Assembly (NCBI RefSeq): GCF_040938485.1
Contig: NW_027271583.1
Span: 310,001 to 374,000, forward strand
DNA length: 64,000 nt
DNA from: Diadema antillarum
Lineage: Eukaryota
Direction: 5' to 3'
In this document: in pieces, positions 483-61,784 of the stretch
How positions within the stretch are numbered: position 1 is the stretch's first letter
Layout of the letters: each line of letters opens with the position of its first letter
Program-made: the position numbers and the translations under genes
Notes under the pieces: generated by a model
Databases searched by the model: none
Seen by the model: only the letters and a program-made list of their open reading frames with translations
What the model was told of the DNA's origin: nothing

Positions 483-1126
483 AGATGTTGAACGATAACT
501 ACACATACAGCTACGTCGACAAATTACTCGACGCTGACTACCCCGACTCCAAAGTGCTCTTCGTCAAAGGGATGATCGAAGGAATTCGCGGCGACTTCGA
601 CATCGTCAACCCAAAATACAAACACTCTTTTCTCGTGCGCCGACCCGAGAAGACCTATAAATCTCTCGATCACATGTCTAAGGTGGTCCCTGGAAAACCG
701 CATGACTTGATCACCGCTTTCAAGAACATCTACCACGACCTCGAAGACTTCTACAACCACGTCCAGACGAAACTCAGCCAACCCTCACCTCCAATTATCG
801 ACGCGGATGATCTCGTCGCCCACCCAGAGACCATCCTGCCGAAGTACTGCGAGGCAATGGGGATCGAGTTCACACCCAAGATGCTCGAGTGGGACAGCGT
901 AGACGCCCGTGAACTCAGGTGGCACTTTGCCGACGTAGGGGACATATTCCACGAGGCAACCCGAAACACTATCGTGTTGTCAAACGCCATGCATGGTCGA
1001 GGGTTTGGTGAGGCACCGAAGTTAGCTCATTACACAGACTCAACGCTTTCTTCTTTAGTTGAGGAATATACAGAACACGCGATGCCAGTTTACGAGAGAT
1101 TTTATGAACGCCGCATAAAGCCTTAA
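483..1126 (+). CDS. Sulfotransferase-like (Sulfotransfer_5/PF19798-type) gene copy 1, last coding exon only; first coding exon lies upstream of the window
   Basis: CAG acceptor at 480-482, then 2 nt and ATG (485), 213 codons to TAA. Contains the FLVRRPEKTYKS and PPIIDADDL...LPKYCEAMGIEF motifs and is homologous to the last exon of the other six copies. Confidence 0.85.
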
Positions 1127-1943
1127 ATTGCTTCAACATTAATTTTCAACTCATAGATATCATAAATTGTCGATATTATGCACATAATCATTCCGTGTAA
1201 ATGCAGGAACACACTTGCTTTATTATATTTAGATATACATCGAAGGATAACTTCCAGCAAGAAATGAGAACATGAATGGGGGGGGGGGGGTATTTGTTTG
1301 TTTGTTTGTTCCTGAAAGAGTCATTTCCATCAAAGTGAATTCTATGTATAGCGACTTCTTTCAATTCGGAATCTTCTGTGGAAATTCAGTATGCACATAT
1401 GAGCTGTTGCAAAGCTTTATAAATGCCATGGATACAAATCATTCAGTCACCTTGAAACGCTGGACACGATAGGCGGGAAAATACATTGCTTTACTTGCTG
1501 ACATCACCAATAATGGTGTGGATAACAATGAATATGATAACATCAATGGTTAAAAAGTGATCATAATGGTTGGGACACTAAAATAGTAAAAATGATAGCA
1601 ATGAAGATGGTAATAATATTTCTCATTATTATTGCAATCATTATGAAGGATTGAGAACTTACCGAAAATGTTGAATAAGGAATGATATGTAAGAGACAAG
1701 TCAGATATAAGGGTATTCTTGCGCTCAGGTAATGTATTATGCGTTGTACAATTAAAACAAACACTGCAGGTATGTACTTTATATTTCTTGACAGATGAGC
1801 TTCTAGACCTTGTTCCTAACTTATAGATTCATTGTGGCGTGTATACATGTGTGTTTGTGTACATTAGGTATTCATGTATATATACATAATTATGATGTCA
1901 TGGAGGTGGTTAGAGTCTCTTCCCACCTCCCTGATGATGGTAT

Positions 1944-1976
<33 letters not shown>

Positions 1977-2290
1977 GGGGGGAGAAAGAGAGAAATGAAG
2001 CCCGTGTCGGGTATGAGAGATTTTCCGTTCCTAAATGTTTTTGTTCTTTTCTTTTCTATTGTGTCTTTTATTTAGTAATTCCATGGGCATGTCATAATCA
2101 TCTATCAAGGAAGTACACACATCATACTAACTTATTCAATTCAATTCAATTCAGTTCAATTCAATAAAGCTTTTATTCCCATCGAACAGAAATATAAACA
2201 GATTTAATACAAGGTATACATCAATAAATCCTAAGCTATATTACCAATCTATATACGGAATGCATATCATATAATGTTTATACAATAGGC

Positions 2291-2322
<32 letters not shown>

Positions 2323-2860
2323 GTGTGTGTGTATATATGTATATATACGTGTATAATATATATATATATATATATATATACGAACGAAGGAATATGAACA
2401 TTGCATACTTTGCAGTTGTAACAAAAAGTAAATCATAATATGGATGGAAAAGAGTGATCTACTGAAAAGTGGAGTTTGTAAAGCGGATATCACTCGAAAG
2501 ACAAAATTCCCCAATCTTATGTTATATACCTAAATGTATATATTCATGGAGCATTTTAAGATAAGTGTGATATGTTACAAGTTATCCAAAAACAAACAAA
2601 CAACCGTAAAACCTATCATACATAATACTTATTTTGAAGTATTTTAAAGTGTCTTTAGAGTACATACAAAAATGAAATAAATGATGCGGCACAGACACTA
2701 TTTCTTGAGCAATGTCAACAAAAATAATGTAGCGACAATAAAAAAAAACAAACACAGACAGTTGATAACTCAGAAAAGAGGTAGGAAGGAAGAGAGAAAG
2801 AAGGACCATAACGACTTTACAGCACGATAGAGGTCAAAGAGAAGGGAGCTAGGATGGACA

Positions 2861-2909
2861 GAAGAACAAGAAAGAAGAACAAGAAAGAAGAACAAGAAAG
2901 AAGAACAAG
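2861..2909. repeat. (AGAACAAGAA AGA)-type purine-rich tandem repeat
   Basis: gaagaacaagaaa repeated about 4 times. Confidence 0.7.
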
Positions 2910-4071
2910 AGAGGTCTGATGGGATCAAGTCACTTAATCTCCAGGACAGGTGAAAGTTATCATACATTATTATTCTTATCACGGAATCGGCCTCAAAATA
3001 TGGCACATCACATGCAAGTTTGACGTTCCTTGTGTAGTTAATCAATTAAACGAGTGTGAAACGGAAAGTGAAAGGCGATTCCCCTCGATTTGTTATAGAA
3101 TCGACAGAAACCTGCCATCGGTTAATGGCTGATTTTGACAGGGCAACCCTTTTCCTGCTGTCAAATAAATCTAGCTTTAAGAGGCTCAGTCGTGTCCTAA
3201 CGACAAGTTCACATGCTGAGATACTTGAGGTATACTCCTTTTATATAATATATTGCAAAGTCATTGTTGATGGCCGCATGATATACTGTTGGATTATATC
3301 GGCAATTCAATTCAATTCAATTCAATTCAATTCAATTCATTTCATTTATTTTCACTCTTCTTTTCCCAACAAAACATAACACAGAATAAATCAGGAATTA
3401 TATCATAAACGTATACATTCGACTTTGCAAGGATAAATGATACAGATAAAGATATATGCATGCATACTGGCAAAAATACAGTTATGCTTCAGTTGAGAAA
3501 AAAAAAGAATTCCACTAAAAAAAAGAGGTCCACTAAAAAGCAAGCTTGTATATGTTGTGAACCACTCAAAGAAAAATGTTATGAAATACTTATTTGCAAA
3601 TATTTAGCACAAATACAATGTAAGACAAGACGGAACAAAACAGGAGAAACACAATTATATGTCATGACTTGAGAGAATGGATCGAAAGACTTGAAGGAAA
3701 AAAGAGAATGCCTACCGCTGAACAAGGAAAACTGAAGAGGGAATTGAAGAGGTGCTTCAGACAGCTGGTGGTTGCACACAGCTGTGCAAGGATTATGATG
3801 ACTATTTCATTAGGTGATAATGAATTCAGTCCACGTTTTTATCACCTTCAATTAATATTCCAATAAAAGTTTACATTTATGATCTTACATTTCGCTGAGC
3901 GACGTTGTGACAGCGCTTTCACTTGTTCTCTTCTCATTTCTTCCGTTATTCCCTCTGGTATATGTTTTGTTTTTTATGTGACTTCATTTTGATAGGTCAC
4001 TAATTACGTTTTTAACCCTAATGCATGTCACTTAAACTGTCATCTTTGACTCACTGGCTCAGGAAGGTTAA

Positions 4072-6346: not shown

Positions 6347-8172
6347 ATGACGACCGCGACCGAGAAACAGGCACGCATCATGATCTGGAGCACTCCGCGC
6401 TCGATCTCGACTGCATTCGCGAGATCGATGTCGGCTCGCGGCGACACCGAGGTCTTCTGGGAGCCCTATCTAGCCTGCTACTCGTTCGGTCCGGAGAGGA
6501 AGAAGCACTGGGGAGACAAGATGCCTGGTACGTGGTCGCCATAATCAAGGTTCTGGTATCGGTCAAAGAGCTGCCATGTCATTGTTTGATAGATAGGCCT
6601 ATTCCGCCATTAAAGGAGACCTACGGATGATTTTCAGATTTTTACATTTGAACAACTGAGATTAGTTTAATATACTGAGGACAGATTTTCAGACTTTGTG
6701 CTAATTGGGATGAAGAATAAGAATATTTTAAAATCTAGAACAAATTACATTGAACAAGGATGATGACATGGCAGAGTCACCATAAGAATGCATGAGTTGG
6801 GGCTCAAGGAACCAGAACAAAAGAAGAAGGCATGCATAGATTATACACAGGTGAACTCGTACGCAAGCGGTATTGTAATGGAATTACACTGCTACATTTC
6901 TGAAATATGTGAACCTCCTTTGTCATCATCCTTGTTCAGTGTAGGCCTAATTTGATTAAGATTTTTCAAAGTGTTGTTTCTCTGCTCAAGAACCATAATA
7001 AATTCCACATATGGAGTTGTCGATTTATGTACTACATGATGTGAAATTATGAAAATCGTCTGGAATGTCCCTTTAAAACCATGATGTACTGGAGTAATGA
7101 CAATGTCGTGGCGCTCTGCCAGAGTTTCCTACATTGTCACAAAGGCCTGGTTATACGACTATACAATCTTACATAGAGACAAAGTTAACAATCAATAAAT
7201 GTGCAGATGTGATATTGATGGTTATTTTCTGATATCTTCAGCTAATTCTTCGACGTGTTCTGTGTAGAGACCACTCTTTGTAATCATCAAAGCGAATCAA
7301 TAATTATTGTGAGTATGCTGTGACGTAACCAAAAAAAAAAATCATTGCTTTCTACTTTTGGCATCTCTCTCTGTTTTTTCTTTTATTCAGAATGGAAAAT
7401 GCGAGAATTTTAAATCTTGGCTAAATTTTAACCCATGATTACGGTAACATAGGTAAAACCGTAAAAAGCTGAATTGTAAAGACTTGTCTTTTCTTCTACA
7501 CTTTTATACTGTCTCTAACTTTCTCCAGAAATGATGAACGCGAAGTACACTTACAGCTACATCGACAAACTGCTCAATGCCGACTATCCGAACTCGACGG
7601 TCCTCTTCGTCAAAGGAATGGTAGAAGGCATTCGTGGAAAATTCGACGTCGTTGACTCGACGTACAGGCACTCGTTCTTGGTACGAAGACCAGATAAGAT
7701 GTTTCGTTCTTTGGAGCGTCTTTCTCGAGAGGTACCCGGCAAAACGCAGGAATTTATAAACGACTTCAAGGATATCTACCACGACCTGGAAGCCTTCTAC
7801 AATCACGTGCAGATAAAATTCGGCCAGACCTCACCTCCCATTATCGACGCGGATGATCTCGTCTCCTACCCAGAGACCATCTTACCGAAGTACTGTGAAG
7901 TGATGGGGATTGAGTTTACACCCAAAATGCTCCAGTGGGACAGCGTAGATCCGAGCCAACTCAACTGGCATTGTTCAGACGTAGGGGAAATTTCTCACCC
8001 GGAGACAAAAAATACTGTAGTGCTAATGAACGCCATGCAGGGACTAGGATTCGGAAAGGCGCCGGACCTGGTAACCATAGAGCATTATAAACCATCCCCC
8101 ATTGTCATGGAGTTCGCCGAGCACGCCATGCCAGTTTATCAACGATTCTATGAACGCCGTATACGACCGTAG
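6347..8172 (+). CDS. Sulfotransferase-like gene copy 2, join(6347..6527,7529..8172), 274 aa
   Basis: ATG 6347 (MTTATEKQARIMIWSTPRSISTAF). 181-nt exon, GT at 6528, CAG at 7526-7528, phase-1 intron, open frame to TAG. WSTPRS 5'-phosphosulfate loop and R-x7-S 3'-phosphate motif typical of PAPS-dependent sulfotransferases. Confidence 0.88.
6614..7072. mobile_element. Kolobok-like MITE in the intron of copy 2, TTAA TSD
   Basis: TTAA|AGGAGACCTACGGATGATTTTC ... GAAAATCGTCTGGAATGTCCCT|TTAA. Confidence 0.7.
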
Positions 8173-12035: not shown

Positions 12036-14627
12036 ATGGCATCGTCAACTGACGACAAAGCTCGCATCATGATCTGGAGCACGCCACGCTCGGTCTCGAC
12101 CGCGCTCGCGAGATCGATGTCGGCTCGAGGAGACACGGAAGTCTTCTGGGAGCCCTACCTGGCTTGCTACTACTGCGGACCAGAGAGGAAAGTAAATTGG
12201 GCGGAGAGTGTGCCTGGTATGCATCACAATATACCCTATATTAGAACCTTTGAAATTGAATAAAGCTCATCATCTTTGATTTGGACTTATTAGTGTTGAA
12301 TAAGAGAAATTGGCGTGACTAAACTCCGTCATGAAAGAAACCAAAGTACGGGGAAGTATAATTGTTTAGCACGATGCCAAGGAACCGCAGAATGCAATGC
12401 TTTACAGGGCCCCAGAAAGTCATGCTTTCTCATTCACAATACTTTCCCATGAGAAGCTTTACGTTTTTGTTTTTTGAAAAAGAAATTCTATTTTTCATAA
12501 TAAAATAGTTCATTGAAGCTGTTGCTGATTGCAAGAATATACATTTTTAATTGAATTCAGATAATGTGAACATTATGCTAGTCCCAAACGGATTGATCTT
12601 GGCCAGTGGATGAATGTTATCCGTCGATGTCAACTAATTCTTGTTAGAACTTGTTAAAAGTGTTCACTTGATGTCAACATGCTATTTTGAGTGCAGAGTA
12701 GGGTCTCTTCACACCACCTCCCTGTTCCTACACTTACCTGGCCAGCTACTCCTTTGGTCCGAACCAAAAGATACACTGATGGGGAGGTATTTATCATTCC
12801 CGGTAATTACCAGCACTTAAGCTCATTATTGTACTTGTAGCACACATTACATGGAAGCACATAGGAGTTACAGGACACTTGTAATTCACTGATATTAGGG
12901 TGTTTTTTTTTCTATTCGCACGTGATTGAAAAATCATGATAGAAATTATATTAGATAATGTTAGTTCTGTGTGACCAATCTGTCAGTTATAAGCGTAGGA
13001 AGCAAGAAACGCAGACCCTGAAAGTAGCTATATCTAGATATACACACGTCATTCCTCAATGCAAAAGAATGATATCAAAATCAAAATTATATTATGAAAT
13101 GATATCAAGATTAAAAATCAAAACTCGTACACCACAAACAATGGCTTATGCAACGCCTCCTCAAGCGCCGTTGAAATAGGTATCATAGGTTTATTAGCAG
13201 GCCTCTATAAGAAAGATGAATTATCTGTCAAAACTCTCATTATAATCAATCTCTGAGCCACCTGTGCAGCCCTATGTGATAAGTCTACCTTCCATCGTTC
13301 ACCAGAATAAGATCTACGGGTTTAAAAGTACAAGTAAACAGCCAGTTTAACTTATTTCTTTCATTACAATTTCTAATTTTCCAAAGGAACATCGAAGGAA
13401 AATGCAGCGCTTAAAAAAAACAACACCGTTTTGACAATACTAATAAAAAAGAGGTAAGGCCCAATTGAATTTCATTGATAATTTCGTACCTCTTAAACAA
13501 AAAGGGCAGAATTAAGATAAAATATATTTGCACTATTTGGAAAGGGCCATCGAAATCTAGAACATTTTTGTTTTGTCTGTGTGCTTGTTTTTATGTGCAA
13601 ATAGTCTCTTCATGTTTCTGGCATTGTATGGGTTTAAAAGGATAGTCTTTAGCTAACGACGGGCATAGGGTCACTAAGTGTCTAGCCTTTTGTCAAGGCC
13701 CTCTCGCTGTATGGTGAAGAGAGTCCAGCTGAGTGGGGTTGCGCTGTCGCGCTCGGCTGGGCTCGCTTCGCTCGCCCATTACAGCGAGAGGGCCTTGACA
13801 GAAGGCTACTAAGTGTCCAGCATGAGCTAAATAATGTCCTGCCTACGAGGACTGCACTCCGTTTTGTATCACCGTAAATAAACATCTTTTTCAAACACAT
13901 TTCGTTTTTATCGGGTGGCGGTATATCAGACAAATCTGAATTTGAATTGTCTGTATTTGTACATTTTCCGGTAGACCCACGTTATACAGGCATGCTGAAT
14001 GACAAGTATACGCATAGCTACATCGACAAGATTCTGAATGCTGATTACCCAAACTCTAAGGTACTCTTCGTCAAGGGGATGGTGGAAGGTATTCGTGGTA
14101 ATTTTGACGTCGTCGACGCCAAGTATAAACATTCCTTCCTAGTTCGCCATCCGGAGAAGATGTTTCGTTCCTCCGAACGGATGTTAACATCAATTCCCGG
14201 TGCGCCGGCAGATTTCATACACAACCTCAAGACCATCTACCACGACCTTGAAGACTTCTACAATCACGTCCAAACAAAATTCGGCCAACCCTCACCTCCC
14301 ATCATCGACGCGGATGATCTCGTCTCCCACCCAGAGACCATCCTACCGAAGTACTGCGAGGCGATGGGGATCGAGTTCACACCCGAAATGCTCGAGTGGG
14401 ACAGCGTAGACCCGAGCCAGCTCAACTGGCATTGTACAGACGTGGGGCCTATCTCAATTGAGGAGCTGAAGAATACAATGGTCTTCTCCAACGCCATGCA
14501 AAGCAAGAGTTTCGGGAAAGCCCCCGATCCCACGAAATCATCTAAGCCGTCGCAAATTGTTGCAGAATATGTCGAGTACGCTATGCCCGTCTATCAGAGA
14601 TTTTATGATCTCCGCATTAAACCATGA
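12036..14627 (+). CDS. Sulfotransferase-like gene copy 3, join(12036..12216,13990..14627), 272 aa (chimeric origin)
   Basis: ATG 12036, GT at 12217, CAG at 13987-13989, frame open across the junction to TGA. Confidence 0.87.
12733..12810 (+). pseudogene. Relic 3' half of a sulfotransferase first coding exon inside the intron of copy 3
   Basis: cttacctggccagctactcctttggtccgaaccaaaagatacactg...attcccggtaattacc resembles copy 4 ctaccttgcttgctactcctttggtccggaccaaacgatacactggggag...attccaggtaattacc. The downstream intron sequence also follows copy 4. Confidence 0.7.
13683..13808. mobile_element. 126-bp hairpin MITE with TAG...CTA ends and 9-bp TSD (CTAAGTGTC)
   Basis: ~33-bp TIR TAGCCTT(T/C)TGTCAAGGCCCTCTCGCTGTA. 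TSD at 13674-13682 and 13809-13817; empty site at ~23697 in copy 4. Confidence 0.8.
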
Positions 14628-21061: not shown

Positions 21062-21360
21062 AGTTCCCTTGGGGACACCAGATTTCACGTTGACCCAATC
21101 GGCGCATTCCCCATTTAGCACAACTCTCTTCAAGAAAATGCATAGTTCATTTTAAATTGGAGTTCACTATACCGCAAAGTTTCAATTTCGTTTCGAAAAA
21201 GACTAAATAGACCAAATCCATCTGAGAGCCAGAATCCATTTCACTAGTCAAATCATGAATAGCTTCTATCAATTGCGTCTCACGTGACCATTTTTTTTTT
21301 CGACAACCGTGCTGACTATCGCACAAAATTGCATTCATTGTGAAGTGATTAGCATGGTCG
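21062..21360 (-). mobile_element. Degenerate LINE (CR1/L2/Jockey-group) reverse transcriptase fragment
   Basis: Minus-strand translations NAILCDSQHGCRKK.WSRETQLIEAIHDL…MDLVYLVF and KRVVLNGECADWVNVKSGVPKGT match RT motifs QHGFR, D.SKAFD and SGVPQG. Confidence 0.75.
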
Positions 21361-22591
21361 ACTACATGCAATATTTTAAAACAGTTTACACACAACAATA
21401 GAGGCTATAATGAAGTTGAACGGTAATTACGTGGGCCGTTTTTCGAGCCCTTTTTAAATAAAGGACAAATTAATGTTCGCATTTTGCGCCATTCAACTGG
21501 CAGCTATAGCACCCGGCGAACAGAATTTTATAGAACAATTCATTAACACAAAGAGTTGCTAATTCTTCATCCCCTTCTTTCCCTTCATTCATTTTTTTTT
21601 TCTTTTGGCTGGCAGGTCATCTGACCTTTGGAATTTATTTACAAAAATTTTCTTTACTGATTAAGTGTAAATCGTGAACACTATTACAAACGATATTTTC
21701 CATGACTGGAACCCTATCAATGAATAATTCAGTCGAGAATATAGACGTAGCAATTATTGATTACAAACTCATATTGTGCATTCTAGGTGTATCAAATCGT
21801 CATCAATTACACGAGTTCCGTTAACTTCCAAAGATAAACTTGTCTTTGCTTCAGTCTTTTTTGAACTTATTTTCCAGAATCTTTTCGGATTTTGCGTTAT
21901 ATTTAATTTCTCTGTCAATCCATGGTGCACAAGGACCAACCATTACTTAACGTTTGGGTACATTTTCTCAGCTGCATCTATTAAATTCCCGTTCCATATT
22001 TTCCAGTTAGACTCAATGTTATCAGTTGTTTCTACATACATTTGTAATTGTAACAAATCCATTCTATATAAGAGACAAAATCGACCCTTGAACCAAGGTA
22101 AATCATCAGAGTATTTTCGTGTACTTTTTTGAGAGTTAAAGCGAAAGTTGGACTTTGCCAATTTAAAGGGCTGTTTTCACGGGGCACACGAACGATTTGC
22201 TAAGGAAGCAAATGTCACAAGTCCAACATTATTTTGTATCCCTTCATGTCATCACAGTAATGAAAGTAAAGCGAAGTTTTATGTAAAGATATATACGAAA
22301 TTACTTATAATTACTTATAATGCTCGACAATACCGGCGGCCCGATGGCCAATTGGGCAACTAAGTTTTGATATGCAGATGGATTACAATGTTTCTCTTTA
22401 TTTCTGCTGTATTACAATCCCAATGTGTGGTACACACGTTGGTTTTAAACATCACACAGATGAATTTGGCATATAAAGGTCCGTGTTAGGAGTGACAAAA
22501 CCAAAACATCTTTCATCTCTGTCCTGGGTTTTGTTGCCGTTGTTGTTGTTGTTTTCATAGGATCTGAATTCTATATTAACATTCGTCCGCC

Positions 22592-24544
22592 ATGGCTTCG
22601 TCTACTGACGACAAAGCTCGCATCATGATCTGGAGCACGCCACGCTCGATCTCGACAGCGTTCGCGAGATCGATGTCGGCTCGAGGAGACACCGAAGTCT
22701 TCTGGGAGCCCTACCTTGCTTGCTACTCCTTTGGTCCGGACCAAACGATACACTGGGGAGACAATATTCCAGGTAATTACCATTTATTTAAGTTCATTAT
22801 TATACCTGTCGCACACAAGACATACATGCACACAGGAGTTAAAGGACACGTGTATTAATTCACAGATTTCCGGGTTGTTGTTGTTTTTTTCATTCGCACG
22901 TGACTGACGAATCATGATAGAAATAGAATAGTGTTATAGTTCTGTGTCATCAATCTGCCAGTTATAATCGCATGAAGCAATAAATAAAGACCCTGAAAGT
23001 AGCCATATACAGCTACATGCATGAACTTTATTCCTCATAATAAAGAAATGGTTTTAAATTAATCTATTTCCCCCCCCCCCCAAAAAAAAAGAGGGTGAAG
23101 GAAGAAAAAACAAAGCTCGTGCATCGCAAATAATAGTTTATACCGCGCTTGCCTCAAGCGCCGTTGATAAGAACCGCTTCAAGGAAAACGGGTTATGGGC
23201 TTATTAGCAGCCTCTCCCATAAAGCCTGATGAATCAGGGTGTCTATCAGTCATAACTCTCATTATAACCAATCTATGCGCCACCACTAAGCCCCTCTACG
23301 TCCAACTTCCACTGTCCACGAAGATAAAATTAACTGTTTTAAAAGTGCAAACAGACCGCCATTTAAATTCATTTCTTTCAGTTCAATTTATAATTTTGTA
23401 ACCGATCATCAAAAGAAAAACAGCGCTTGTAGAAACATTATCATTTTGACAATACTAATAAAAAGGAGGTTAGACCTAATTGAATTTGTTTGATAATTTC
23501 GGAGCTCTTAAACAAAAATGGAAAAGTTAGCGTAATATGTATGGATGTGCACTACATGGAAAGGGCCATCCAAATGTAAAACTTTTTTTTTGTCTGTGTG
23601 TTTGCTTTTATGTGCACATACATGTGTCTTCATATCTCTGGGTTGTGAAGGTATAAAAGAACATTCTTTATAGCTAGCGACAGGTACTCCAGGTCACCCA
23701 GTGCCCAGTATAAGCAAGATTGTCTAGCATATAATTATGTTGACTGCACTTTGTTGTGTATCATCATAAGTGTCATTATCTCTGTTTCACATATTTCGAT
23801 TTGATCAGGTAGCGTTATATATAGTAGGCAAATCTAAATTTTTCACACAATACGTAAGAGTTTGAATTTCCTGTATTTGTACTTTTTTTTCTGGCATGTC
23901 ATACAGGTATGCTGAATGACAAGTATACGTATAGCTACATCGACAAGATTCTGAATGCTGATTACCCAAACTCTAAGGTACTCTTCGTCAAGGGGATGGT
24001 GGAAGGTATTCGTGGTAATTTCGACATCGTTGACGCCAAGTTCAAGCATTCATTTCTGGTGCGCCATCCCGAAAAAATGTTTCGTTCCCTCGAGCGAATG
24101 ATAACAGCGATTCCCGGTGCGAAGGTAGATTTCATACATGGTCTCAAAACCATCTACAACGACCTTGAAGACTTCTACAACCACGTCCAGACGAAATTCG
24201 GTCAACCCTCTCCTCCCATCATCGACGCGGATGATCTCGTCTCCCACCCAGAGACCATCCTACCGAAGTACTGCGAGGCGATGGGGATCGAGTTTACACC
24301 CAAAATGCTAGAGTGGGACAGCGTAGACCCGAGCCAACTCAACTGGCATTGTACAGACGTGGGCGCTATATCCAGCGATGCACTGAAGAATACAGTGATC
24401 CTGTCCAACGCCATGCAAAGCAAGGGTTTGGGGAAAGCCCCCGATCCCACGAAATCATCTACGCTGTCACCCATTGTTGCAGAATGCGCCGAGTATGCCA
24501 TGCCCGTCTATCAGAGATTTTATGATCTCCGCATTAAGCCATGA
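22592..24544 (+). CDS. Sulfotransferase-like gene copy 4, join(22592..22772,23907..24544), 272 aa
   Basis: ATG 22592, GT at 22773, CAG at 23904-23906, intact frame. Confidence 0.88.
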
Positions 24545-25134
24545 TACCATTGCTAGGGATTGTTAACACTGATATGGTAATGATTATCAAAAAGAAAAAT
24601 TATACATTTTTTTTAAATCAATGCTTTCAACATATAATAACAATGTATAAAATACGACACGATATGACAGAAAATGTAATTGATAACGGGAATTATCGCA
24701 ACGCTACATGCATGATATCTCATTACTACAGGGTGAAAGAGGAATGATACTGTCGGTTCGTACATTACGTCACCAATGTGTGTCGACTTTACTTGTGAAT
24801 ATACATGAGAATGCACATTCTACACTCATTTGCAAGGCATCGATTATTTAGAAGCAGAAAGGGTCATCTGAATTTAAAACTTTATCGTATGATATTATGT
24901 GTATAATATATGTGAAGCCATTATCCCCGTCGAGCATGTCCTTTTGATATTAAATGGCCTAGGCTCCATCTCTATTATTCTTACATTTTTTTAATTTGTC
25001 TTTTGAACAACAGGTACGTGATATCTTATTTTCACTTAAGAGTTAAAAACAACTGCTAGTAATCATTGTGTATTATTAAGAAAAATAATTTTGTTAATTC
25101 ATCAAATTATGATCATCAACCTATATCCATGTAA

Positions 25135-25641
25135 ATAACTGTTCAAATATTACTTAAACTTTGTTCAAATGGCTTTCTGTTATATTCTTGTATGAAAAAG
25201 GGAACGCAGGAATAATATCAAATCAATCGAAATCAAATTTGATGAGCAAGGCAATATGTAATTCACTGTTAAAATATTACTTGATAACTTTGTTCAGTTG
25301 GCTTTCTGTTATATTCTTGTATAAAAAAGGGAACGCAGGAATAACATCAAATCAATCGAAATCAAATTTGATGAGCAAGGTAATATGTAATTCACTGTTA
25401 AAATATTACTTGATAACTTTGTTCAGTTGGCTTTCTGTTATATTCTTGTATGAAAAAGGGAACGCAGAAATAATATCAAAATCAATTAAAGTCAAATTTG
25501 ACGAGCAAGGTAATATGTAATTCACTGTTAAAATATTACTTGATAACTTTGTTCAGTTGGATTTCTGTTATATTCTTGTATGAAAAAGGGAACGCAGAAA
25601 TAATATCAAAATCAATTAAAATCAAATTTGACGAGCAAGGT
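25135..25641. repeat. ~129-bp tandem repeat, ~4 copies
   Basis: aatattactt recurs at 25146, 25273, 25402 and 25532. Confidence 0.85.
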
Positions 25642-52965: not shown

Positions 52966-53735
52966 TCTAGAAAATTATCTAGTTTGCCTTCAAGATTCTT
53001 TACTTTAGCAGTGTCATATATATTTTCTTACGCTTCCTAGATATTTTCTTCATCACTCTATCAATCTATGGTACACAAGGACCAACAATTACTTTATGTT
53101 TGGGTACATTTTTCTTAGTTGCATCTAATAAGTTACCCTTCCATAATCTTCCAGTTAGACTCAATATCATTAGGTGATTCGCCATACATTTTGTAATTGT
53201 AACAAATCCATTCTATATAAAAGTCAAAATTGACCTTTGAACCAAGGTAAATCATCGGACTATCACCCCGGTTTTTTTTTTTTTTTTTTTTAGTTATATC
53301 AAATGTTGGGCTTTGCCATTTAAAGGGCTGTCCACGGGGCATACAAGATATGCGAAGAATGCGAATGTCGCAAGTCTAACATTCGTTTCCCTTCATGTCA
53401 TCTGAGTTATGAAAGTGAAGTAAAGTTTTATGTTAAGATAATTTATGAAATTACTTATAATTACTTATATTGCTCGACAGGAGCAGTGGCCTGGTGGCCA
53501 ATTGGGCAACTAAGTTGCAACATGGATTACAATGTTTATTTTTATTTCTGATGTACACTGTATTATAATCCTAATGTGTGGTATACACACGTCGGATTTA
53601 AACATTGCACAGATGAATTTGGCATATGAAAGTCTGTGTTAGGAGTGACAAAACCAAAACATCTTTCATCTCTTCCTGGGTTTTGTTGTTGTTGTTTTTT
53701 ATAGGATCTGAATTCTATATTAACGTTCGTCCGCC

Positions 53736-55546
53736 ATGGCATCCTCAACTGACGACAAAGCTCGCATTATGATCTGGAGCACGCCACGCTCGATCTCGAC
53801 CGCGTTCGCGAGATCGAAGTCGGCTCGAGGAGACACGGAAGTCTTCTAGGAGCCCTACCTTGCCTGCTACTCCTTTGGTCCGAACCAAACCATACGCTGG
53901 GGAGACAATATTCCAGGTAATTAAAGGACGCGTGTATTAATCCACAGATTTCCGGCTTTTTTCCATTCGTACATGACTGACGAATCATGATAGAAATAGA
54001 ATAGTGTTATAGTGCTGTGTCATCAATCTGCCAGTTATAATCGCATGAAGTAATAAATATAGACCCTGAAAGTAGCCATAGCTAGCTACATGAACTTCAT
54101 TCCTCATAACAAAAGGATGAAAAAACAAAGCTCGTACATTTCAAACAATGTTTTATGTAGCGCTTGCCTCAAGCATCGTTGATAAGAACCCTTTTAAGGA
54201 AAACAGGTCATAGGCTTATTGGCAGGTCTCTATAGGCGTGATGAATTAGGGTGTCTATCAGTCATAACTCGCATTATAAGCAATCTATGTGCCACCACTA
54301 AGCCCCTCTACGTCCAACTTCCACTGTCCACGAGGATAAAATTTACTGTTTTAAAAGTGCAAACTGACCGCCATTTAAATTCATTTCTTTCAGTTCAACT
54401 TGTAATTTTGTGACCGATCATCAAAAGAAAAACAGCGCTTGTAGAAACATCATTTTGACAATACTAATGAAAAGGAGGTTAGACCTAATTGACTTTGTTT
54501 GATAATTTCGGAGCTCTTAAACAAGAATGGCAAAGTTAGCGTAATATCGTATGGATGTGCACTACATGGAAAGGGCCATCCAAATGTAAAACATTTTGTT
54601 TTGTCTGTGTGTTTGTTTTCGTGTGCACACATGTGTCTTCATATCTGTGGGTTGTATAGGTATAAAAGAACATTCTTTATAGCTAAAGACAGGTACTCCA
54701 GGTCACTCAGTGCCCAGTATAAGCAAAATTGTCTCGCATATAATTATGTCGACTGCACTCTGTTGTGTATCGGCGTAAGTGTCATTATTTCTGTTCCATA
54801 TATTTCGTTTCGATCGGGTAGCGTTATAGTACACAAATCTGAATTTTTCACACAATACGTAATAGTTTTAATTTCCTGTATTTGTACATTTTCTGGCATG
54901 TCATACAGGTATGCTGAATGACAAGTATACATATAGCTACATCGACAAGATTCTGAATGCTGATTACCCAAACTCCAAGGTACTCTTCGTCAAGGGGATG
55001 GTGGAAGGTATTCGTGGTAATTTCGACATCGTCGACGCCAAGTTTAAGCATTCATTTCTGGTGCGCCATCCCGAAAAGATGTTTCGTTCCCTCGAGCGAA
55101 TGATAACAGCTCTTCCAGGTGCGAAGGTAGATTTCATACATGGTCTCAAAACCATCTACAACGACCTTGAAGACTTCTACAACCACGTCCAGACGAAATT
55201 CGGCCAACCCTCTCCTCCCATTATCGACGCGGACGATCTCGTCACCCACCCAGAGACCATCCTACCGAAGTACTGCGAGGCGATGGGGATCGACTTCACG
55301 CCCAAAATGCTCGAGTGGGACAGCGTAGACCCGAGCCAACTCTACTGGCATTGTACAGACGTGGGGGCTATCTCCAGTGATGCGCTGAAGAATACTGTGA
55401 TCATGTCCAACGCAATGCAAAGCAAGGGTTTCGGGAAAGCCCCCGATCCCACGAAATCATCTAAGCCGTCGCCCATTGTTGCAGAATGTGCCGAGTATGC
55501 CATGCCCCTCTATCAGAGATTTTATGATCTCCGCATTAAACCATGA
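53736..55546 (+). pseudogene. Sulfotransferase-like copy 6, join(53736..53916,54909..55546), premature TAG at codon 38
   Basis: TTC TAG GAG at 53847-53849 where all other copies have TGG (W38); also ATG>AAG (M28K). Splice sites and the last exon are intact. Confidence 0.8.
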
Positions 55547-56295
55547 TACCATTGCTATAGGGATTGTTAACTCTTAAATGTTAATGATTATTCAAGAAGA
55601 AAAATATGAATTTTCTTTTAAATCAATGCTTTAAAGCATATGATATGTATAAAATACGACATGATATGACAGAAAATGTAATAGATAACGGGAATTATCG
55701 CGACGCTACATGCATGATATCTTAATACTACAGGGTGAAAGAGAAAAAGACTCTTGGTCCGTATATCACGTCACCGATGTATGTCGACTTTACTTTTGAA
55801 TATACATGAGAATGCACATTCTACACTCATTTGCAAGGTGTCATGTTATTCAAAAGAAGAAAAGGTCTTCTGGATTATACTCTATCGTATTGTATTGTGT
55901 GCATGTGACGCCATTATCCTCGTCAAGCATGTCCTTTTGATATTGTCTTCACCGTCTCAATTATTGTTACATTTGTTTCGTTTGTCTTTTGAACAGCAGG
56001 TTTAAAGAAGAACAATTCCAGATTCTCACAGAAGGAAAGACTTATAAGAAAGTACTATAATAGGCAAAGGACAAGTACAAGTAATGTTACTGTTCACTTA
56101 CCATCGAAGGTGTAGAAAATGCCAGTGTTACAGTAATATCATTTTGGAGAGAGGTCGTCATGAGTCAATGAAGTGTGCATGACATTTAACATGCATGATG
56201 ATAAAAAATGGTCTATGAACCCAAGACAACGTCACTTCAAAACAGCTGAACACTTATAACGAGAAATTTAACCCATGATAGTGAGAGATGATTGT

Positions 56296-56845
56296 ACTGT
56301 ATACAGATTTAACTGCCCTATAAGCTTATTTTGGGGTTTTGGGATTTGGAGGGTTAGTGATAGGCCTACTTCGAACCGTCAAAGATTTACGTGTTCTTCT
56401 CGAAAACCTCAAGACGCTCTTTTCCTTTGTTTCACCTTTTTATTTCTTTCCTATGTTAAAATCGTTGATAAAATGCACTATGTACTGTACAGATTTAACT
56501 AGTCTATGAGCTTATATGGGGGGTTTGGGATTTGGAGGGTTAGTGATAAGCCTGCTTCGAACCGTCAAAGATGTACGTGTTCTTCTCGAAAACCTCAAGA
56601 CGCTCTTTTCCTTTGTTTCACTTTTTTATTTCTTTCCTATGTTAAAATCGGTGATAAATGCACTATGTACTGTACAGATTTAACTGCCCTATAAGCTAAT
56701 TTGGGGGTTTGGGGACTTGGAGGGTTAGTGATAAGCCTACTTCGAACTGTCAAAGATTTACGTGCTCTTCTTGAAAACCTCAGACACTCTTTTCCTTTGT
56801 TTCACCTCTTTATTTCTTTCCTATGTTAAAATCGTTAATAAAAAT
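56296..56845. repeat. ~185-bp tandem repeat, 3 copies
   Basis: The unit beginning …cagatttaact(g)…ata(a/t)gcttat occurs three times; the paralogous region (~26530-26690) has one copy. Confidence 0.85.
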
Positions 56846-57859
56846 GAACTGCACAAATGTATCAAGACTATCAAAGACGACATTTTATGTTGCCTGGAAC
56901 TCTGTTAACCTCATTGTAGTCTTGTGTCTCGTCGTAAAGGTTGTATATCCCTTCCAGAAATTCCACGATTTTTTTTCGGCTTCTTTTGTGGTTGCTCTCA
57001 TTATCACTATTTCTTAAAACTTTTGAAACATTGAATTTCCTATTGTCTAGCCTTCTTTTTAGCTCCATTTTTGAAAAAAAAAAACCCAAACATTTAGTTC
57101 GTCTGATTGTACCACATTAATACCAATATATGATTAAAAGTACACACAATTCTGGGATCTGTATTATATTTTGCTAGTTATCATGTCACAAATACATTGG
57201 AAGTGTGAAGTATGCGACGGCGTATTCAATGAAGAATATCTTATCGACATTATCATCACTTTCTTCTTTTACGTCGATTTTTTTAGGGAGTTATGAGATT
57301 AAATAGAATGAAATAACCTGTTTCACTTTCTACAATTTTACAATTCCGTGGGAATATTTGACAAGACATCGCACGTCTTCTTACTGGCGTCTTCATTCAG
57401 TACAGTGCGAAGACGGTTGTGAGCACTCCTATGGTGAGTCATACATTATCGCCGTTGACCTCAGCCAGGGTCGCGTGCGTGCGTTCTGGATCTGCGCACT
57501 CTTCACAGACCGTGCAGCGCAGTCGGTATCGTCGTCAAATAGATCGGGGTTCGACAAAAACAGACGAAACGGCTCGTTCGCGCACGCCATACGCCAGAGA
57601 TAAAAAATATATCACACAGGGAAATAGCCAGAAGTAACACGATCGTATATACGTAGGCCCTACTAGCAACCTGACCGTGAAAACACTTCCGGTAAAGTAG
57701 TAATAGAGCCATGGCTGAATATCGATTTTCATTTATAATAATGTTTAAAACCTTAGAAACGGGGAGTCCATGCTCATACTTGGATAATCGAGGCACTTAA
57801 ATGGGTTCAGAGTACATGCATTGTGGTGTTGACAGGGTCAGACAAACATTGCTCGAATA

Positions 57860-58247
57860 CATCATGGACTTCGAACAGCGAGACAGGCCTCGATCTTGCT
57901 GTTCATAGACGTGTGGTTTCCGATGCTTTGTTATCTGTCGGTACACTAACTCCCGTCGTTGACCTGTGATCTTTTAAACAAAAATGAGCCATACATGATG
58001 GGGAATGTCATCATATTATTATTGTATGCAGAAATACGAGCAGTTAGGACGTGGCAAAAGATGCATGGTTGATTATTAAATCTGTAGGCCTATGATACAA
58101 ACACACACACCCCGTGCTTCGAATGGCTTTCTAAAAACAAGTGTCATACGAAAGGTGTTCCGATCATCATCGCCTTCTCCTGGCCAACACAAAAGCAACA
58201 GTCGCTATCACTGGCCTTCTACGAAAGACAAACGCAGAGCTAAAGAG
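57860..58247 (+). promoter_or_regulatory. Putative promoter and non-coding first exon of copy 7 (donor GT at 58248)
   Basis: Same conserved block followed by a GTGAG donor; acceptor at 59572. Confidence 0.5.
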
Positions 58248-59603
58248 GTGAGTTTGTACTTTTCTTGACCTTTCACACTGACGTAACTCTTGCCTAGTCA
58301 TATTTCAGATTTTCGCGGTTGGTTGTTGCATTGGAAAGAACTTGTAAAGCATAATATCATACATGCTCAAATTATTATCATAATCAATGTGAAAAGCGAA
58401 TTAAAATGATGTGATCGCCGTCCTACGTTTTGTCAGGAAGTTGGTGAATTTTGAGAAATGTCGATTTTTGTAATTTTCGCCACAAATGCCATGTATCTCC
58501 AGAAACTGCATCTGCGCAGTTTCAAGGTCAAAGCTTAAACTGATTAAGTGAAGGATAATATCTAAATGGTCAATGACCAGATTATCTAAAACTAATGCGG
58601 AGGTATGAGAAGCATATAGAATAGTCGAATTTGAGAAGTTGCAAGATTTTTCTATAACCATAAGTGCATTCTTTCGACCTCATCTTCAAACTTCCGTTTC
58701 CATTTAAAATGCGTTTGTCAGAAGTATTTTATGTGCAAATACAAGAAGATAACATTTACCAACCATTGTTTCTGAAAATAGTCGATGTCCACGCACACAC
58801 ACATACAAACACACGAACAGCCATGTGCTTTTTATGGTCTTTCGGGACTTGCATGACCCCCAAAATTGTCTCTTTCCGTCTGCTTTTTCAAAGATTATAG
58901 TTAGGCCTATATTCATTTGTTCATTCTTTGTATATACATAACTGCATATAACAGCATCATCTGTTTTTCCGGATATAGTAATGAGAGCGTGCATGTTATT
59001 GTATACGCGAGGGTAGAATGATAATACGTAGGTATTTTTGTTCTCAAGACTAGTCAAGGTAAATTTGCTTGCGGCACAACCTAACTTCTGTGTTACTTTA
59101 GAAATCGTCGACCACCGGTTATTTCTGAAATTACATAGGAGTCAGGACTATTGCAAAGATCATCTGCTACAGTACTGACACAAATTTTTGGAGGCCTTAA
59201 TGTGTAGACCTATAAAATATATCTTCTTACATAGAACATTAAACAGAAATTCAGTTATTAGAATAAATGATAGCACACTCAGTGCAGTTTCTTCGCACTC
59301 GCGCTCTCTGGCTCTCTTTTCTTGTTAAAACTACATGTTTGTGTTGTCCCGTGCACGTCTTCAAATTTATGAAAGTGAAACGCAGTTTACACAAAAGAGA
59401 AGAAGTTGTTTATCTTGTCCATATATTTCAAGCTACTTACCATCCTTTCCTTCCTCATTATATATCATTGTGTACTATAAACTTGGGTTGTAAATATTTC
59501 ATCAGAATCATACAGTATTGCTTTGACTGTTTATGTGTTGTATACTCAAGGACTGATTTTTGTTTTCATTAGGATACGTAATTCACAGCAACACCTGTTC
59601 GCC

Positions 59604-59867
59604 ATGGCATCATCAACCAACGACAAAGCTCGCCTCATGATCTGGAGTACGCCACGCTCGATCTCGACCGCGTTCGCGAGATCGATGTCTGCTCGAGGAG
59701 ATACCGAGGTGTTCTGGGAGCCTTACCTTGCCTGCTACTCGTTTGGTCCGGACAGAAAGATACACTGGGGAGACCATATTCCAGGTATAGGCCCACTATA
59801 ATTATAGTCCATCATTACACATGTCGCACACAAGGCATGCATGCACATTGGACTTAGAAAACACATG

Positions 59868-59920
<53 letters not shown>

Positions 59921-60032
59921 ACATCAAATCTTGCACATTAATAGACACGTCTATTAATGTGCAAGATTTGATGTCAATAGATTTACTGTTCTTGCACCGC
60001 CCGCCATGTTGTGGTTAAGTCTTTTGATGCCA

Positions 60033-60077
<45 letters not shown>

Positions 60078-60239
60078 TGGTCCAAAAAATGTTGCGAATT
60101 CACGTATTGGCTCCAATATATTACAAACGAAGAATCAAGAAACTCCTGAGGAAGGTGGAGGCCCACCGAAAATTTGAGTACAATAAACTCATTCTTATTG
60201 GCGAAATAATGCATTACTAGTTTATTTCTTGATTCTTCG

Positions 60240-60279
<40 letters not shown>

Positions 60280-61784
60280 TACACGTCCAACTACAATAAT
60301 CAATGTACCAATAGATAATGCTAGTTCTATGTGACAGGTCCGTCACTTATAATCGTCGGAAGCAGTAAACGTATAGACCGAAAATGCCCGAGCTACATCC
60401 CTGAACATGTCTTTAGTTCTTGCTGGTCGATTCAAGGCACCTGCCTATAGGGTACTGTGGTGGAGAGCCCTCAAGATAAACAGGCCGGCCTCCTCGATGA
60501 ATGATAAATGACCAGCCGTAACTCTCATACCTTCAAGAGGAATATAAATGTTCCTTCTAACCCTCCATGAATAAGATTTACCGGAGTTTCACAAGTCCAA
60601 ACAGGTAGCGATTCTTAAATAATTTCTTTACGTTCACGCAGTAGTCGTATATTCATATAGTATTTTGACAATAGTATTAGTCGATTATTCAAAGAGTTAA
60701 TTGAAGTTGATAAGTACTTATCTCGTTCTTAAACAAATTACGGCAGCGTGTCGTCACGTGGTTATACTCCACGGAAGAGTCGGCAAAATCAAAGTCATTT
60801 CTTGTCTACGGTTATATTCTGTGTGCATGTATACAGGTGTTTTATATTGAATATGTACGTTTGTGTGTGCGTGTGAATGGGTGTTGAAAGGACAATCTTT
60901 ACGTAACGACGGGTACTGTTACGTCACTCTGTACCCAGTAGACGCAAAATTGACCTTCCTATCAAAATGCCCTCATCAGTTGCGTATCGCCATAAAACTG
61001 TATCTCTGTTCCATATTTTCCTTTTCGATCGAGTAACATTATACTTTTCCTAATACATCTGTTGGAATGCTGCAGACAAATCTGAAATTTTCAAATATAA
61101 CAGTTTGCGTTACTCTTTGCATTTCCTGGTATGCCATATTATATAGGTATGCTGAATGACAAGTATACGTACAGCTACATCGACACGATTCTGAATGCTG
61201 ATTACCCAAACTCCAAAGTACTCTTCGTGAAGGGGATGGTGGAAGGTATTCGTGGTAGCTTCGACGTCGTCGACGCTAAGTATAAACATTCCTTCCTCGT
61301 TCGCCATCCCGAAAAGATGTTTCGTTCCCTCGAGCGACTGGTTACAGCAATTCCCGGTGCGGAGCCAGATTTCATAAACGGTTTCAAGAACATCTACCAT
61401 GACCTCGAAGACTTCTACAAACACGTCCAAACAAAATTCGGCCAACCCTCTCCTCCCATCATCGACGCGGATGATCTCGTCTCCCACCCAGAGACCATCC
61501 TACCGAAGTACTGCGAGGCTATGGGGATCGAGTTCACCCCCAAGATGCTCGAGTGGGACAGCGTAGACCCGAGCCAACTCAACTGGCATTGTACAGACGT
61601 GGGAGATATCGCCAATGAGGTGCTGAAGAATACGGTGATCTTTTCCAACGCCATGCATAGTCAGGGTTTCGGGAAAGCCCCCGATCCCACGAAATCCGCA
61701 AAGCCGTCACCTACAGTTGCAGAGTATGCCGAGTTCGCCATGCCCGTCTATCAGAGATTTTACGATCTCCGCATTAAACCATGA
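59604..61784 (+). CDS. Sulfotransferase-like gene copy 7, join(59604..59784,61147..61784), 272 aa
   Basis: ATG 59604, GT at 59785, TAG acceptor at 61144-61146, intact frame. Confidence 0.88.
59916..59979. repeat. Perfect 31-bp inverted repeat with 2-nt loop
   Basis: tattgacatcaaatcttgcacattaatagac-ac-gtctattaatgtgcaagatttgatgtcaata. Confidence 0.85.
60142..60179 (+). ncRNA. Minimal type I hammerhead ribozyme-like motif (Penelope-like pLTR remnant) in the intron of copy 7
   Basis: ACTC-CTGAGGA-A-GGTGG-AGGC-CCACC-GAAA-ATTT-GAGT, followed by AATAAA. Lies inside a 16-bp inverted repeat (60127-60142 / 60225-60240) between (TA)n tracts. Confidence 0.5.

What the first reader, a model, noticed from the sequence alone, without database searches (positions are those of the whole stretch)
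483..61784. Seven-copy, still-evolving tandem array of stand-alone Sulfotransfer_5-type sulfotransferases in an animal genome
Seen: seven same-strand paralogues with identical exon architecture, five or six of them intact, none with a signal peptide or TM segment. Known: the WS.PR..ST..../R-x7-S/IIDADDL signature is that of the PF19798 sulfotransferase-like domain. That domain is best known as the N-terminal module of plant BCAT-like proteins and from microbial proteins, so such genes are often mis-annotated as aminotransferases and are functionally uncharacterised in animals. Inference: a lineage-specific expansion of a non-classical cytosolic sulfotransferase family, possibly a specialised small-molecule sulfation system (sulfated defence metabolites, pigments or xenobiotics). 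A horizontal microbial origin is possible.
Basis: partly seen in the sequence, partly recalled or inferred. Interest (0 to 1): 0.78.

Follow-up and report, generated by a model that had tools for sequence, protein, structure and literature searches.

The report
Sea-urchin array of orphan sulfotransferase genes
The long-spined sea urchin Diadema antillarum carries a real row of eight closely related genes (seven in this window) for soluble sulfate-transferring enzymes of a family that no one has characterised in any organism; the row is old, inherited vertically and still gaining and losing copies, but what the enzymes sulfate is unknown.

Summary
The window is Diadema antillarum contig JBFRCO010000695.1, about 310001-374000. 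It carries seven same-strand, two-exon genes with one phase-1 intron after codon 60.

- Five genes are complete and intact (c2, c3, c4, c5, c7).
- c6 has a stop at codon 38.
- c1 lacks only exon 1, which lies upstream of the window.
- An eighth copy (c0) lies about 19 kb upstream.

All copies match Pfam PF19798 (Sulfotransfer_5). They keep every residue that is invariant across animal and bacterial relatives. They fold with high confidence into the PAPS-sulfotransferase fold, closest to the OLS and CurM sulfotransferase domains and to TPST.

Coding sequences are under purifying selection (dN/dS 0.09-0.29). Three segments differ between paralogues but are conserved between D. antillarum and D. 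setosum orthologues, which suggests specialised acceptors.

D. setosum has six one-to-one orthologues in the same order. D. antillarum gained an inner pair, c5 and the pseudogene c6.

Animal proteins form one clade that follows the species tree, so recent horizontal transfer is not supported. The pigment-cell "Sult" of urchins is a different, classical SULT.

Neither the acceptor nor expression is shown. The genes are already in RefSeq as "uncharacterized protein". The scan noted similar sulfotransferase arrays on other pieces of this genome (s1-215052, s1-220816). One may be the second haplotig of this array.

The parts
483..1126 (+). c1, exon 2 (214 codons and stop). Exon 1 lies upstream of the window.
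   Evidence: RefSeq XP_071503836 is on this contig.
6347..6527 (+). c2 exon 1
   Evidence: The spliced product equals P0005 / XP_071503838.
7529..8172 (+). c2 exon 2 (gene product 274 aa, intact)
12036..12216 (+). c3 exon 1
   Evidence: The product equals P0127 / XP_071503839.
12735..12785 (+). Relic of an exon 1 (residues 41-56) inside the c3 intron. D. setosum has it too.
   Evidence: L087 12373-12435
13990..14627 (+). c3 exon 2 (272 aa, intact; the fastest-evolving copy)
22592..22772 (+). c4 exon 1
   Evidence: The product equals P0002 / XP_071503840.
23907..24544 (+). c4 exon 2 (272 aa, intact)
36779..36959 (+). c5 exon 1
   Evidence: The product equals P0122 / XP_071503841.
43734..44371 (+). 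c5 exon 2 (272 aa, intact). Its intron is swollen to 6.8 kb by repeats.
53736..53916 (+). c6 exon 1, with an in-frame stop at codon 38 (53847-53849) and M28K
54909..55546 (+). c6 exon 2 (open here; broken by several indels on the second haplotig)
59604..59784 (+). c7 exon 1
   Evidence: The product equals P0001 / XP_071503842.
61147..61784 (+). c7 exon 2 (272 aa, intact). This is the last gene of the array; an ARMC6-like gene follows about 6 kb downstream.
21357..28653 (+). Duplicated segment around c4. Its second copy lies at about 48216-58418, around c6.
   Evidence: Self-comparison, 82-90% identity
43091..44708 (+). Duplicated segment around c5 exon 2. Its second copy lies at 60493-62116, around c7. 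The flanks 35939-36524 / 58811-59414 and 47712-48213 / 63140-63637 also pair.

Best explanation
The locus is a tandem, birth-and-death array of genes for soluble sulfotransferases that most likely use PAPS as the sulfate donor. They belong to the stand-alone branch of Pfam family PF19798.

Proposed mechanism (inferred from sequence and model):
- The strand-loop-helix W14-S-T-P-R18-S-I-S21-T22 binds the 5'-phosphosulfate.
- R113-x7-S121 binds the 3'-phosphate.
- E39 acts as the general base and K89 stabilises the transition state, as Arg78, Glu99 and Lys158 do in human TPST2.

The acceptor is unknown. Three segments (about residues 46-62, 120-140 and 210-250) differ between paralogues but are held constant within each orthologue. 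I read this as each copy having its own small-molecule acceptor or acceptor range.

History:
- The gene was in animals before cnidarians and ambulacrarians split.
- It gained its single intron in the echinoid or echinoderm line.
- It multiplied to six copies before D. antillarum and D. setosum diverged.
- D. antillarum then gained an inner pair by a two-gene segmental duplication. One new copy (c5) survives under weaker constraint and the other (c6) is dying.

Shown here: the anatomy, the family, the fold, the conservation and the history. Inferred: PAPS use, the catalytic roles, a small-molecule acceptor, and specialisation of the copies.
For: Family and fold:
- PF19798 at E 1e-11.
- A family profile hits the CurM sulfotransferase at E 2.4e-6 and the OLS sulfotransferase at 2.2e-4.
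- The AF2 model has pLDDT 92 and pTM 0.91.
- All 45 Foldseek hits at E <= 0.001 are PAPS sulfotransferases or close kin of them (one is retinol dehydratase).
- Best VIA-align matches: 4gox Z 14.8, 3ap3 (TPST2) Z 14.3, 4gbm Z 14.2, each over about 220 residues.

Catalytic residues:
- W14, P17, R18, S21, T22, E39, K89, R113, P115, S121, W197 and W207 are kept in all 8 Diadema copies, in all or nearly all of 14 other animal proteins (R18 and S121 each differ in one), and in essentially all of 80 bacterial proteins.
- The R18-to-E39 spacing of 21 residues equals Arg78-to-Glu99 in TPST2. The catalytic role of those TPST2 residues is stated in PMC10951654.

Selection:
- dN/dS is 0.09-0.29 for all pairs.
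- In the variable segments omega is 0.22-0.67 between paralogues, against 0.02-0.10 between orthologues for c0, c4 and c7.

History:
- Trees.
- The D. setosum array has six genes in the same order next to the same ARMC6-like gene, with no relic of c5 or c6.
- dS of c4/c6 (0.19) and c5/c7 (0.21) is about the same as the interspecies dS of orthologues, 0.13-0.29.
- Segmental duplication seen in the self-comparison.
- The intron is shared with S. purpuratus and absent in Nematostella and Ptychodera.
Against: - No member of PF19798 has a published activity that I could find, so sulfotransfer itself is an inference from fold and motifs.
- Expression was not shown. No RNA run holding the genes was listed. 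The laid contigs gave no intron-skipping joint, and only one 158-nt contig came from a run labelled RNA.
- The equivalence of E39 and K89 with the TPST2 and CurM catalytic residues rests on spacing and invariance. I could not make a residue-level superposition; HMMER's weak alignment to CurM is shifted by two residues there.
- No pairwise omega exceeds 1, so positive selection for new specificities is not demonstrated.
- The variable segments include the least confident parts of the model (pLDDT 77-89).
Confidence: 0.72

Rival explanations
1. The enzymes are 'activating' sulfotransferases. They add sulfate as a leaving group within a biosynthetic route, as the CurM and OLS sulfotransferase domains do, rather than making stable sulfate esters.
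For: The closest solved relatives by sequence profile and by fold are the CurM and OLS sulfotransferases. In the sister bacterial clade the gene is fixed next to a PLP-type class IV aminotransferase gene, which hints at a pathway role for the family.
Against: The animal proteins sit in the other clade, without the partner gene. No biosynthetic gene lies within 10 kb of the Diadema genes examined. The Z difference from other sulfotransferases is small (14 against 11-12).
Confidence: 0.1
2. The enzymes sulfate tyrosines of peptides or proteins, like TPST, but in the cytosol.
For: TPST1 and TPST2 are among the best fold matches (Z 13.6-14.3; top Foldseek hits). The same Arg/Glu/Lys spacing is present.
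Against: Sequence identity is only 12-15%. There is no signal anchor or lumenal topology. No Pfam or PDB sequence hit to TPST was found. Bacterial relatives are widespread, which fits metabolite substrates better.
Confidence: 0.05
3. The array came into the urchin lineage recently from a microbe, or is contamination.
For: Bacterial homologues exist in many phyla at 25-32% identity. The Nematostella and Ptychodera genes are intronless.
Against: Animals form one clade that follows the species tree. The genes have a spliceosomal intron shared across echinoids. They lie on megabase scaffolds between animal genes, with conserved synteny to ARMC6 in two species. A single, very old transfer into an early animal is not excluded.
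Confidence: 0.03
4. The proteins are inactive pseudo-enzymes or binding proteins that only keep the fold.
For: No activity is known for any family member.
Against: All donor-site and putative catalytic residues are invariant from bacteria to urchins. Purifying selection is strong (omega 0.02-0.04 for c4 and c7 orthologues).
Confidence: 0.04

Closest known systems
Pfam PF19798 (Sulfotransfer_5), stand-alone members in other animals (for example S. purpuratus XP_003731237, Nematostella 'BCAT-like protein 2')
   Same: Same family, length (about 265-280 aa), motifs and invariant residues. Sequence identity is 55-70% to other urchins and 27-35% to starfish, sea cucumber, acorn worm and cnidarians.
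   Different: Diadema has eight tandem copies derived from a single echinoid lineage. Camarodont urchins spread their copies over three other clades. Nematostella and Ptychodera genes have no intron.
Plant 'branched-chain-amino-acid aminotransferase-like' proteins and the bacterial gene pair of a sulfotransferase with a class IV aminotransferase
   Same: They share the PF19798 domain and the same invariant residues.
   Different: The urchin proteins have no aminotransferase domain and no such neighbour. In the tree they fall in the 'solo' clade, separated from the aminotransferase-linked clade by a long, fully supported branch. Plant sequences themselves were not placed in the tree.
CurM and OLS sulfotransferase domains (PDB 4gbm, 4gox)
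   Same: Best solved relatives: profile E 2.4e-6 and Z 14-15. They share a PRSxST-type donor loop, a Glu 21 residues after the Arg, and an R-x7-S 3'-phosphate motif.
   Different: Those are domains of polyketide synthase modules acting on carrier-bound acyl chains. Here the proteins are free-standing, with 13-19% identity.
Tyrosylprotein sulfotransferases TPST1 and TPST2
   Same: Same fold (Z about 14) and the same Arg/Glu/Lys catalytic layout by spacing (PMC10951654).
   Different: TPSTs are Golgi type II membrane proteins acting on proteins. There is no sequence-level hit here, and these proteins have no membrane anchor.
Classical cytosolic SULTs (PF00685), including the urchin pigment-cell Sult (sult1c2, SPU_006187)
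   Same: Both are soluble, share the PAPS-sulfotransferase fold (Z about 11) and occur as tandem expansions in animals.
   Different: There is no PF00685 hit. The donor loop has Arg instead of the SULT Lys, and a Glu replaces the SULT His as the likely base. The pigment-cell gene is a different gene family (PMC7455242).

Membership tests
Pfam PF19798 Sulfotransfer_5 | Score above the curated gathering threshold of the family HMM | tested here: met
   P0001 (= c7) scores 44.9 bits against a cut-off of 23.2. c2, c1-like and Sp proteins score 42-46 bits.
PAPS-dependent sulfotransferase superfamily | 5'-phosphosulfate-binding strand-loop-helix motif | tested here: met
   W14-x2-P17-R18-x2-S21-T22 follows strand 9-15 and leads into helix 21-30. 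It is invariant in animals and bacteria.
PAPS-dependent sulfotransferase superfamily | 3'-phosphate-binding motif (Arg, then Ser 8 residues on, at a strand-helix turn) | tested here: met
   R113 and S121 are kept in all 8 Diadema and all 80 bacterial sequences; among the 14 other animal proteins R113 is kept in all and S121 differs in one. Strand 107-112 is followed by helix 115-128. This region aligns to CurM sulfotransferase.
PAPS-dependent sulfotransferase superfamily | Sulfotransferase fold | tested here: met
   Model pLDDT 92. Best matches have Z 14-15 over about 220 of 272 residues, and all 45 Foldseek hits at E <= 0.001 are PAPS sulfotransferases or close kin of them (one is retinol dehydratase).
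PAPS-dependent sulfotransferase superfamily | Binding of PAPS and transfer of sulfate | not testable with these tools
   Needs recombinant protein.
TPST / CurM-type catalytic set | Glu general base and Lys that superpose on TPST2 Glu99 and Lys158 | tested here: inconclusive
   E39 and K89 are invariant and the Arg-to-Glu spacing is the same, 21 residues (PMC10951654). No residue-level superposition was available, and the HMMER alignment is weak in that region.
Classical cytosolic SULT (PF00685) | PF00685 match with a Lys in the donor loop and a catalytic His | tested here: not met
   No PF00685 hit at E <= 0.1. The donor loop has Arg18.
Plant BCAT-like fusion proteins | C-terminal class IV aminotransferase-like domain | tested here: not met
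   The proteins are 272-275 aa with PF19798 only. There is no PF01063 neighbour within 10 kb of the genes examined.
Tyrosylprotein sulfotransferase | N-terminal signal anchor with a lumenal catalytic domain | tested here: not met
   The N-terminus is polar and the catalytic strand starts at residue 9.

The most novel reading that the evidence does not exclude
The paralogues are a diversified toolkit that sulfates urchin-specific small molecules, for example polyhydroxynaphthoquinone pigments or sterols. Sulfated spinochromes B and E are known from another urchin (PMC9605347), and steryl sulfates are reported from echinoderms (a 1983 study listed in the references of PMC7996750). If so, this array would give the first biochemical function for the whole PF19798 family, including the plant 'BCAT-like' proteins and the bacterial pair of sulfotransferase and aminotransferase.
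Probability: 0.2. Interest if true: 0.6.

Novelty: new member of a known kind. Interest (0 to 1): 0.36.

Why it matters
I found no characterised member of PF19798, although the family occurs in bacteria of many phyla, in plants (per Pfam and RefSeq naming) and in cnidarians, hemichordates and echinoderms. RefSeq names many of the animal proteins as aminotransferase-like, which is wrong.

A set of eight recent, mostly intact paralogues differs mainly in three segments. That offers a natural panel for finding the acceptor and the specificity determinants.

The locus is also a clear small example of gene birth and death. It shows a dated two-gene duplication, one survivor under relaxed constraint, one pseudogene broken differently on two haplotigs, and possible null alleles of c2 and c3.

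It does not overturn anything known.

Tried and rejected
- Link to the urchin pigment pathway: rejected. The pigment-cell Sult is sult1c2 / SPU_006187, a classical SULT.
- Literature on PF19798 or on the RefSeq names and accessions: only plant expression lists and catalogue mentions, nothing on animals.
- NCBIfam: no hit.
- RNA evidence: no RNA run holding c7 was listed. Laying two DNA runs, one run of unknown kind and one RNA-labelled run on 53500-59499 gave only short Logan contigs with cross-mapping from paralogues. There was no intron-skipping joint and no clear read-out of the codon-38 stop. I treat this as inconclusive.
- Conserved bacterial neighbours in the 'solo' clade: only lineage-specific synteny (ABC transporters in Desulfotignum, NRPS parts in Streptomyces), so no hint to the substrate.
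- ESM Atlas feature search outside PF19798: only generic bacterial Sulfotransfer_3 clusters.
- The 663-aa MetaClust member P0134 is a Cyclin_C + sulfotransferase chimera. I took it for an old merged gene model and ignored it.
- The big representative search was not run, because the family scans and word searches had settled family and distribution.


Full report
**What is there**

The window has 38% G+C and no N. tblastn with the two exons of the last copy finds seven exon-2 copies and six exon-1 copies, all on the + strand. Each exon 1 starts at an ATG and ends one base into codon 61 at a GT donor. Each exon 2 follows a pyrimidine-rich tract and an AG, so the intron is phase 1 at the same place in all copies.

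Gene models:

| Copy | Exon 1 | Exon 2 | State |
|---|---|---|---|
| c1 | upstream of the window | 483-1126 | exon 2 open |
| c2 | 6347-6527 | 7529-8172 | intact, 274 aa |
| c3 | 12036-12216 | 13990-14627 | intact, 272 aa |
| c4 | 22592-22772 | 23907-24544 | intact, 272 aa |
| c5 | 36779-36959 | 43734-44371 | intact, 272 aa |
| c6 | 53736-53916 | 54909-55546 | in-frame stop at codon 38, plus M28K in a conserved stretch |
| c7 | 59604-59784 | 61147-61784 | intact, 272 aa |

**Whose genome, and the true extent**

The products of c2, c3, c4, c5 and c7 are identical to RefSeq proteins of the sea urchin Diadema antillarum. All are named 'uncharacterized protein'.

The window corresponds to JBFRCO010000695.1, about 310001-374000. 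An eighth paralogue, c0 (P0004, XP_071503835), lies about 19 kb upstream of the window. It does not overlap it. An ARMC6-like gene follows c7 by about 6 kb and ends the array.

A second contig of the same assembly (JBFRCO010000794.1) carries the same array at 95-99% identity. I take it for the other haplotype.

**Family and fold**

Full-length proteins match Pfam PF19798 (Sulfotransfer_5) at E about 1e-11 and 43-46 bits, against a cut-off of 23.2. There is no PF00685 hit. NCBIfam has nothing.

A profile of 50 family members hits the CurM sulfotransferase domain (4gbm, E 2.4e-6) and the olefin synthase sulfotransferase domain (4gox, E 2.2e-4).

The AlphaFold2 model of c7 is confident: pLDDT 92.2, pTM 0.91. 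All 45 Foldseek hits at E <= 0.001 are PAPS-dependent sulfotransferases or close kin of them; one is retinol dehydratase. By VIA-align the best matches are:
- 4gox: Z 14.8, 222 residues, rmsd 3.9
- TPST2 3ap3: Z 14.3
- 4gbm: Z 14.2
- classical SULTs, heparan sulfate sulfotransferases, Stf9 and others: Z 11-12.5

**Active site**

I aligned 8 Diadema, 14 other animal and 80 bacterial proteins. The following residues are invariant or nearly so, and all eight Diadema copies, the pseudogene included, keep them:
- W14, P17, R18, S21, T22
- E39, P40, K89
- R113, P115, S121
- the D167-A-D-D-L stretch
- W197, W207

W14 to T22 sits in a strand-loop-helix (strand 9-15, helix 21-30) and is the 5'-phosphosulfate loop. 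R113-x7-S121 sits at the turn from strand 107-112 to helix 115-128 and is the 3'-phosphate motif.

The spacing from Arg18 to Glu39 is 21 residues, the same as Arg78 to Glu99 in human TPST2. That Arg78, Glu99 and Lys158 are the catalytic residues of TPST2, and that their Ala mutants lose activity, is stated in PMC10951654. I therefore propose E39 as the base and K89 as the transition-state lysine. This is inference, because I had no residue-level superposition.

**Selection and specialisation**

Pairwise dN/dS among copies is 0.09-0.29.

Amino-acid differences between paralogues concentrate in three segments, about 46-62, 120-140 and 210-250. Omega in those segments:

| Comparison | Omega in the three segments |
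|---|---|
| Between paralogues | 0.22-0.67 |
| D. antillarum vs D. setosum orthologues of c0, c4, c7 | 0.02-0.10 |
| c3 orthologue pair | 0.74 |

Outside the segments omega is 0.05-0.16 between paralogues.

So the segments are not free loops. They were changed after duplication and then fixed. That pattern is expected if each copy has its own acceptor. No omega exceeds 1.

**History**

In a tree of 44 animal proteins all Diadema copies form one clade (93/97). Other urchins fall in three further clades. The order is urchins, then Acanthaster, Apostichopus and Ptychodera, with cnidarians outside, as in the species tree.

With 80 bacterial relatives added, the 19 animal proteins are one clade (SH-aLRT 95). 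They sit inside a 'solo' group of the family. This speaks against recent horizontal transfer. A single ancient transfer cannot be excluded, and the Nematostella and Ptychodera genes are intronless. The intron is shared by Diadema and Strongylocentrotus at the same codon and phase.

D. setosum (OZ188192.1, about 36.92-37.00 Mb) has six genes in the order c0, c1, c2, c3, c4, c7, followed by the same ARMC6-like gene. There is no trace of further copies between c4 and c7. It even shares the small exon-1 relic in the c3 intron.

D. antillarum has c4-c5-c6-c7 there. Self-comparison shows that the c4 region pairs with the c6 region and the c5 region with the c7 region. This is a duplication of a two-gene unit. 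Its dS (0.19 and 0.21) is about that of interspecies orthologues (0.13-0.29).

Constraint on the four copies:

| Position | Copy | dN/dS |
|---|---|---|
| Outer | c4 | 0.02 |
| Outer | c7 | 0.04 |
| Inner | c5, c6 | 0.10-0.13 |

**Ongoing change**

On the second haplotig:
- c6 lacks the codon-38 stop, but its exon 2 carries several indels and is only 92% identical.
- c2 has a 1-bp deletion in a GGGG run. This is either a possible null allele or an assembly error.
- c3 exon 2 was not found where expected, and RefSeq has no c3 protein there.

**What it is not**

The sulfotransferase known from urchin pigment cells is sult1c2 (SPU_006187), a classical SULT (PMC7455242; PMC3144734). I found no paper on an animal PF19798 protein.

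Sulfated spinochromes exist in another urchin (PMC9605347), and steryl sulfates are reported from echinoderms (a 1983 study listed in the references of PMC7996750). These are candidate acceptors only.

**Expression**

No RNA run was listed for c7. The laid runs were assembled contigs only. They showed no joint across the intron. One 158-nt contig of a run labelled RNA lay on c6 exon 2. Expression is therefore not shown.

**Earlier notes of the scan**

Several notes describe tandem arrays of sulfotransferase-fold genes on other pieces of this genome. One was followed up with a similar verdict (s1-215052), and one names Sulfotransfer_5 (s1-220816). I could not tell whether they concern the second haplotig or other families.

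**Verdict**

The array is real and well defined, and it belongs to an orphan enzyme family. The genes are annotated but unnamed in RefSeq. The evolutionary picture is clear but the chemistry is unknown. I score it as moderately interesting.

Noticed in passing
L009, L016, L018-L020, L023, L025, L027, L030, L034, L041, L043, L044, L048, L055, L059, L061, L064, L078 (bacterial loci): In 19 of 80 bacterial loci a class IV aminotransferase gene (PF01063) abuts the PF19798 gene on the same strand, in either order, across at least six phyla. These sulfotransferases form their own fully supported clade. This is the same pairing as the plant 'BCAT-like' fusion, so it looks like a conserved two-enzyme module of unknown function.
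   Followed up: partly
window 28648-35447: A 6.8-kb element with about 590-bp inverted ends (28653-29236 / 34879-35442, 91% identity) sits between c4 and c5. It was also noted by the scan as a long-TIR transposon. The second haplotig has a shorter interval there.
   Followed up: partly
window 36960-43733: The c5 intron is 6.8 kb against 1.0-1.8 kb in the other copies. It holds a repeat (38513-38909) that recurs inverted at 10614-11020 and near c0 (L001 8443-8866).
   Followed up: no
window 12735-12785; L087 12373-12435: A short relic of exon 1 (residues 41-56) lies in the intron of c3. It is present in both Diadema species, so it is older than their split.
   Followed up: partly
L091 (Nematostella), L092 (Ptychodera): The cnidarian and hemichordate family members are single-exon genes on chromosome-scale scaffolds. 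The urchin intron is a later gain.
   Followed up: partly
L003 4943-6832 against window 53736-55546: The two haplotigs' c6 copies are only 90-92% identical, while the flanks are about 96%. Each is about as far from c4 as from the other c6. Either the pseudogene decays fast or the two are not strictly allelic.
   Followed up: partly
P0134 (MetaClust, 663 aa): A sequence clustered with the S. purpuratus protein joins a Cyclin_C domain to the sulfotransferase. It is probably an old merged gene model.
   Followed up: no
window 27880-28000, 35850-35940, 60000-60300: Long (CA)n / (TG)n and (TA)n-type microsatellites lie between the genes.
   Followed up: no
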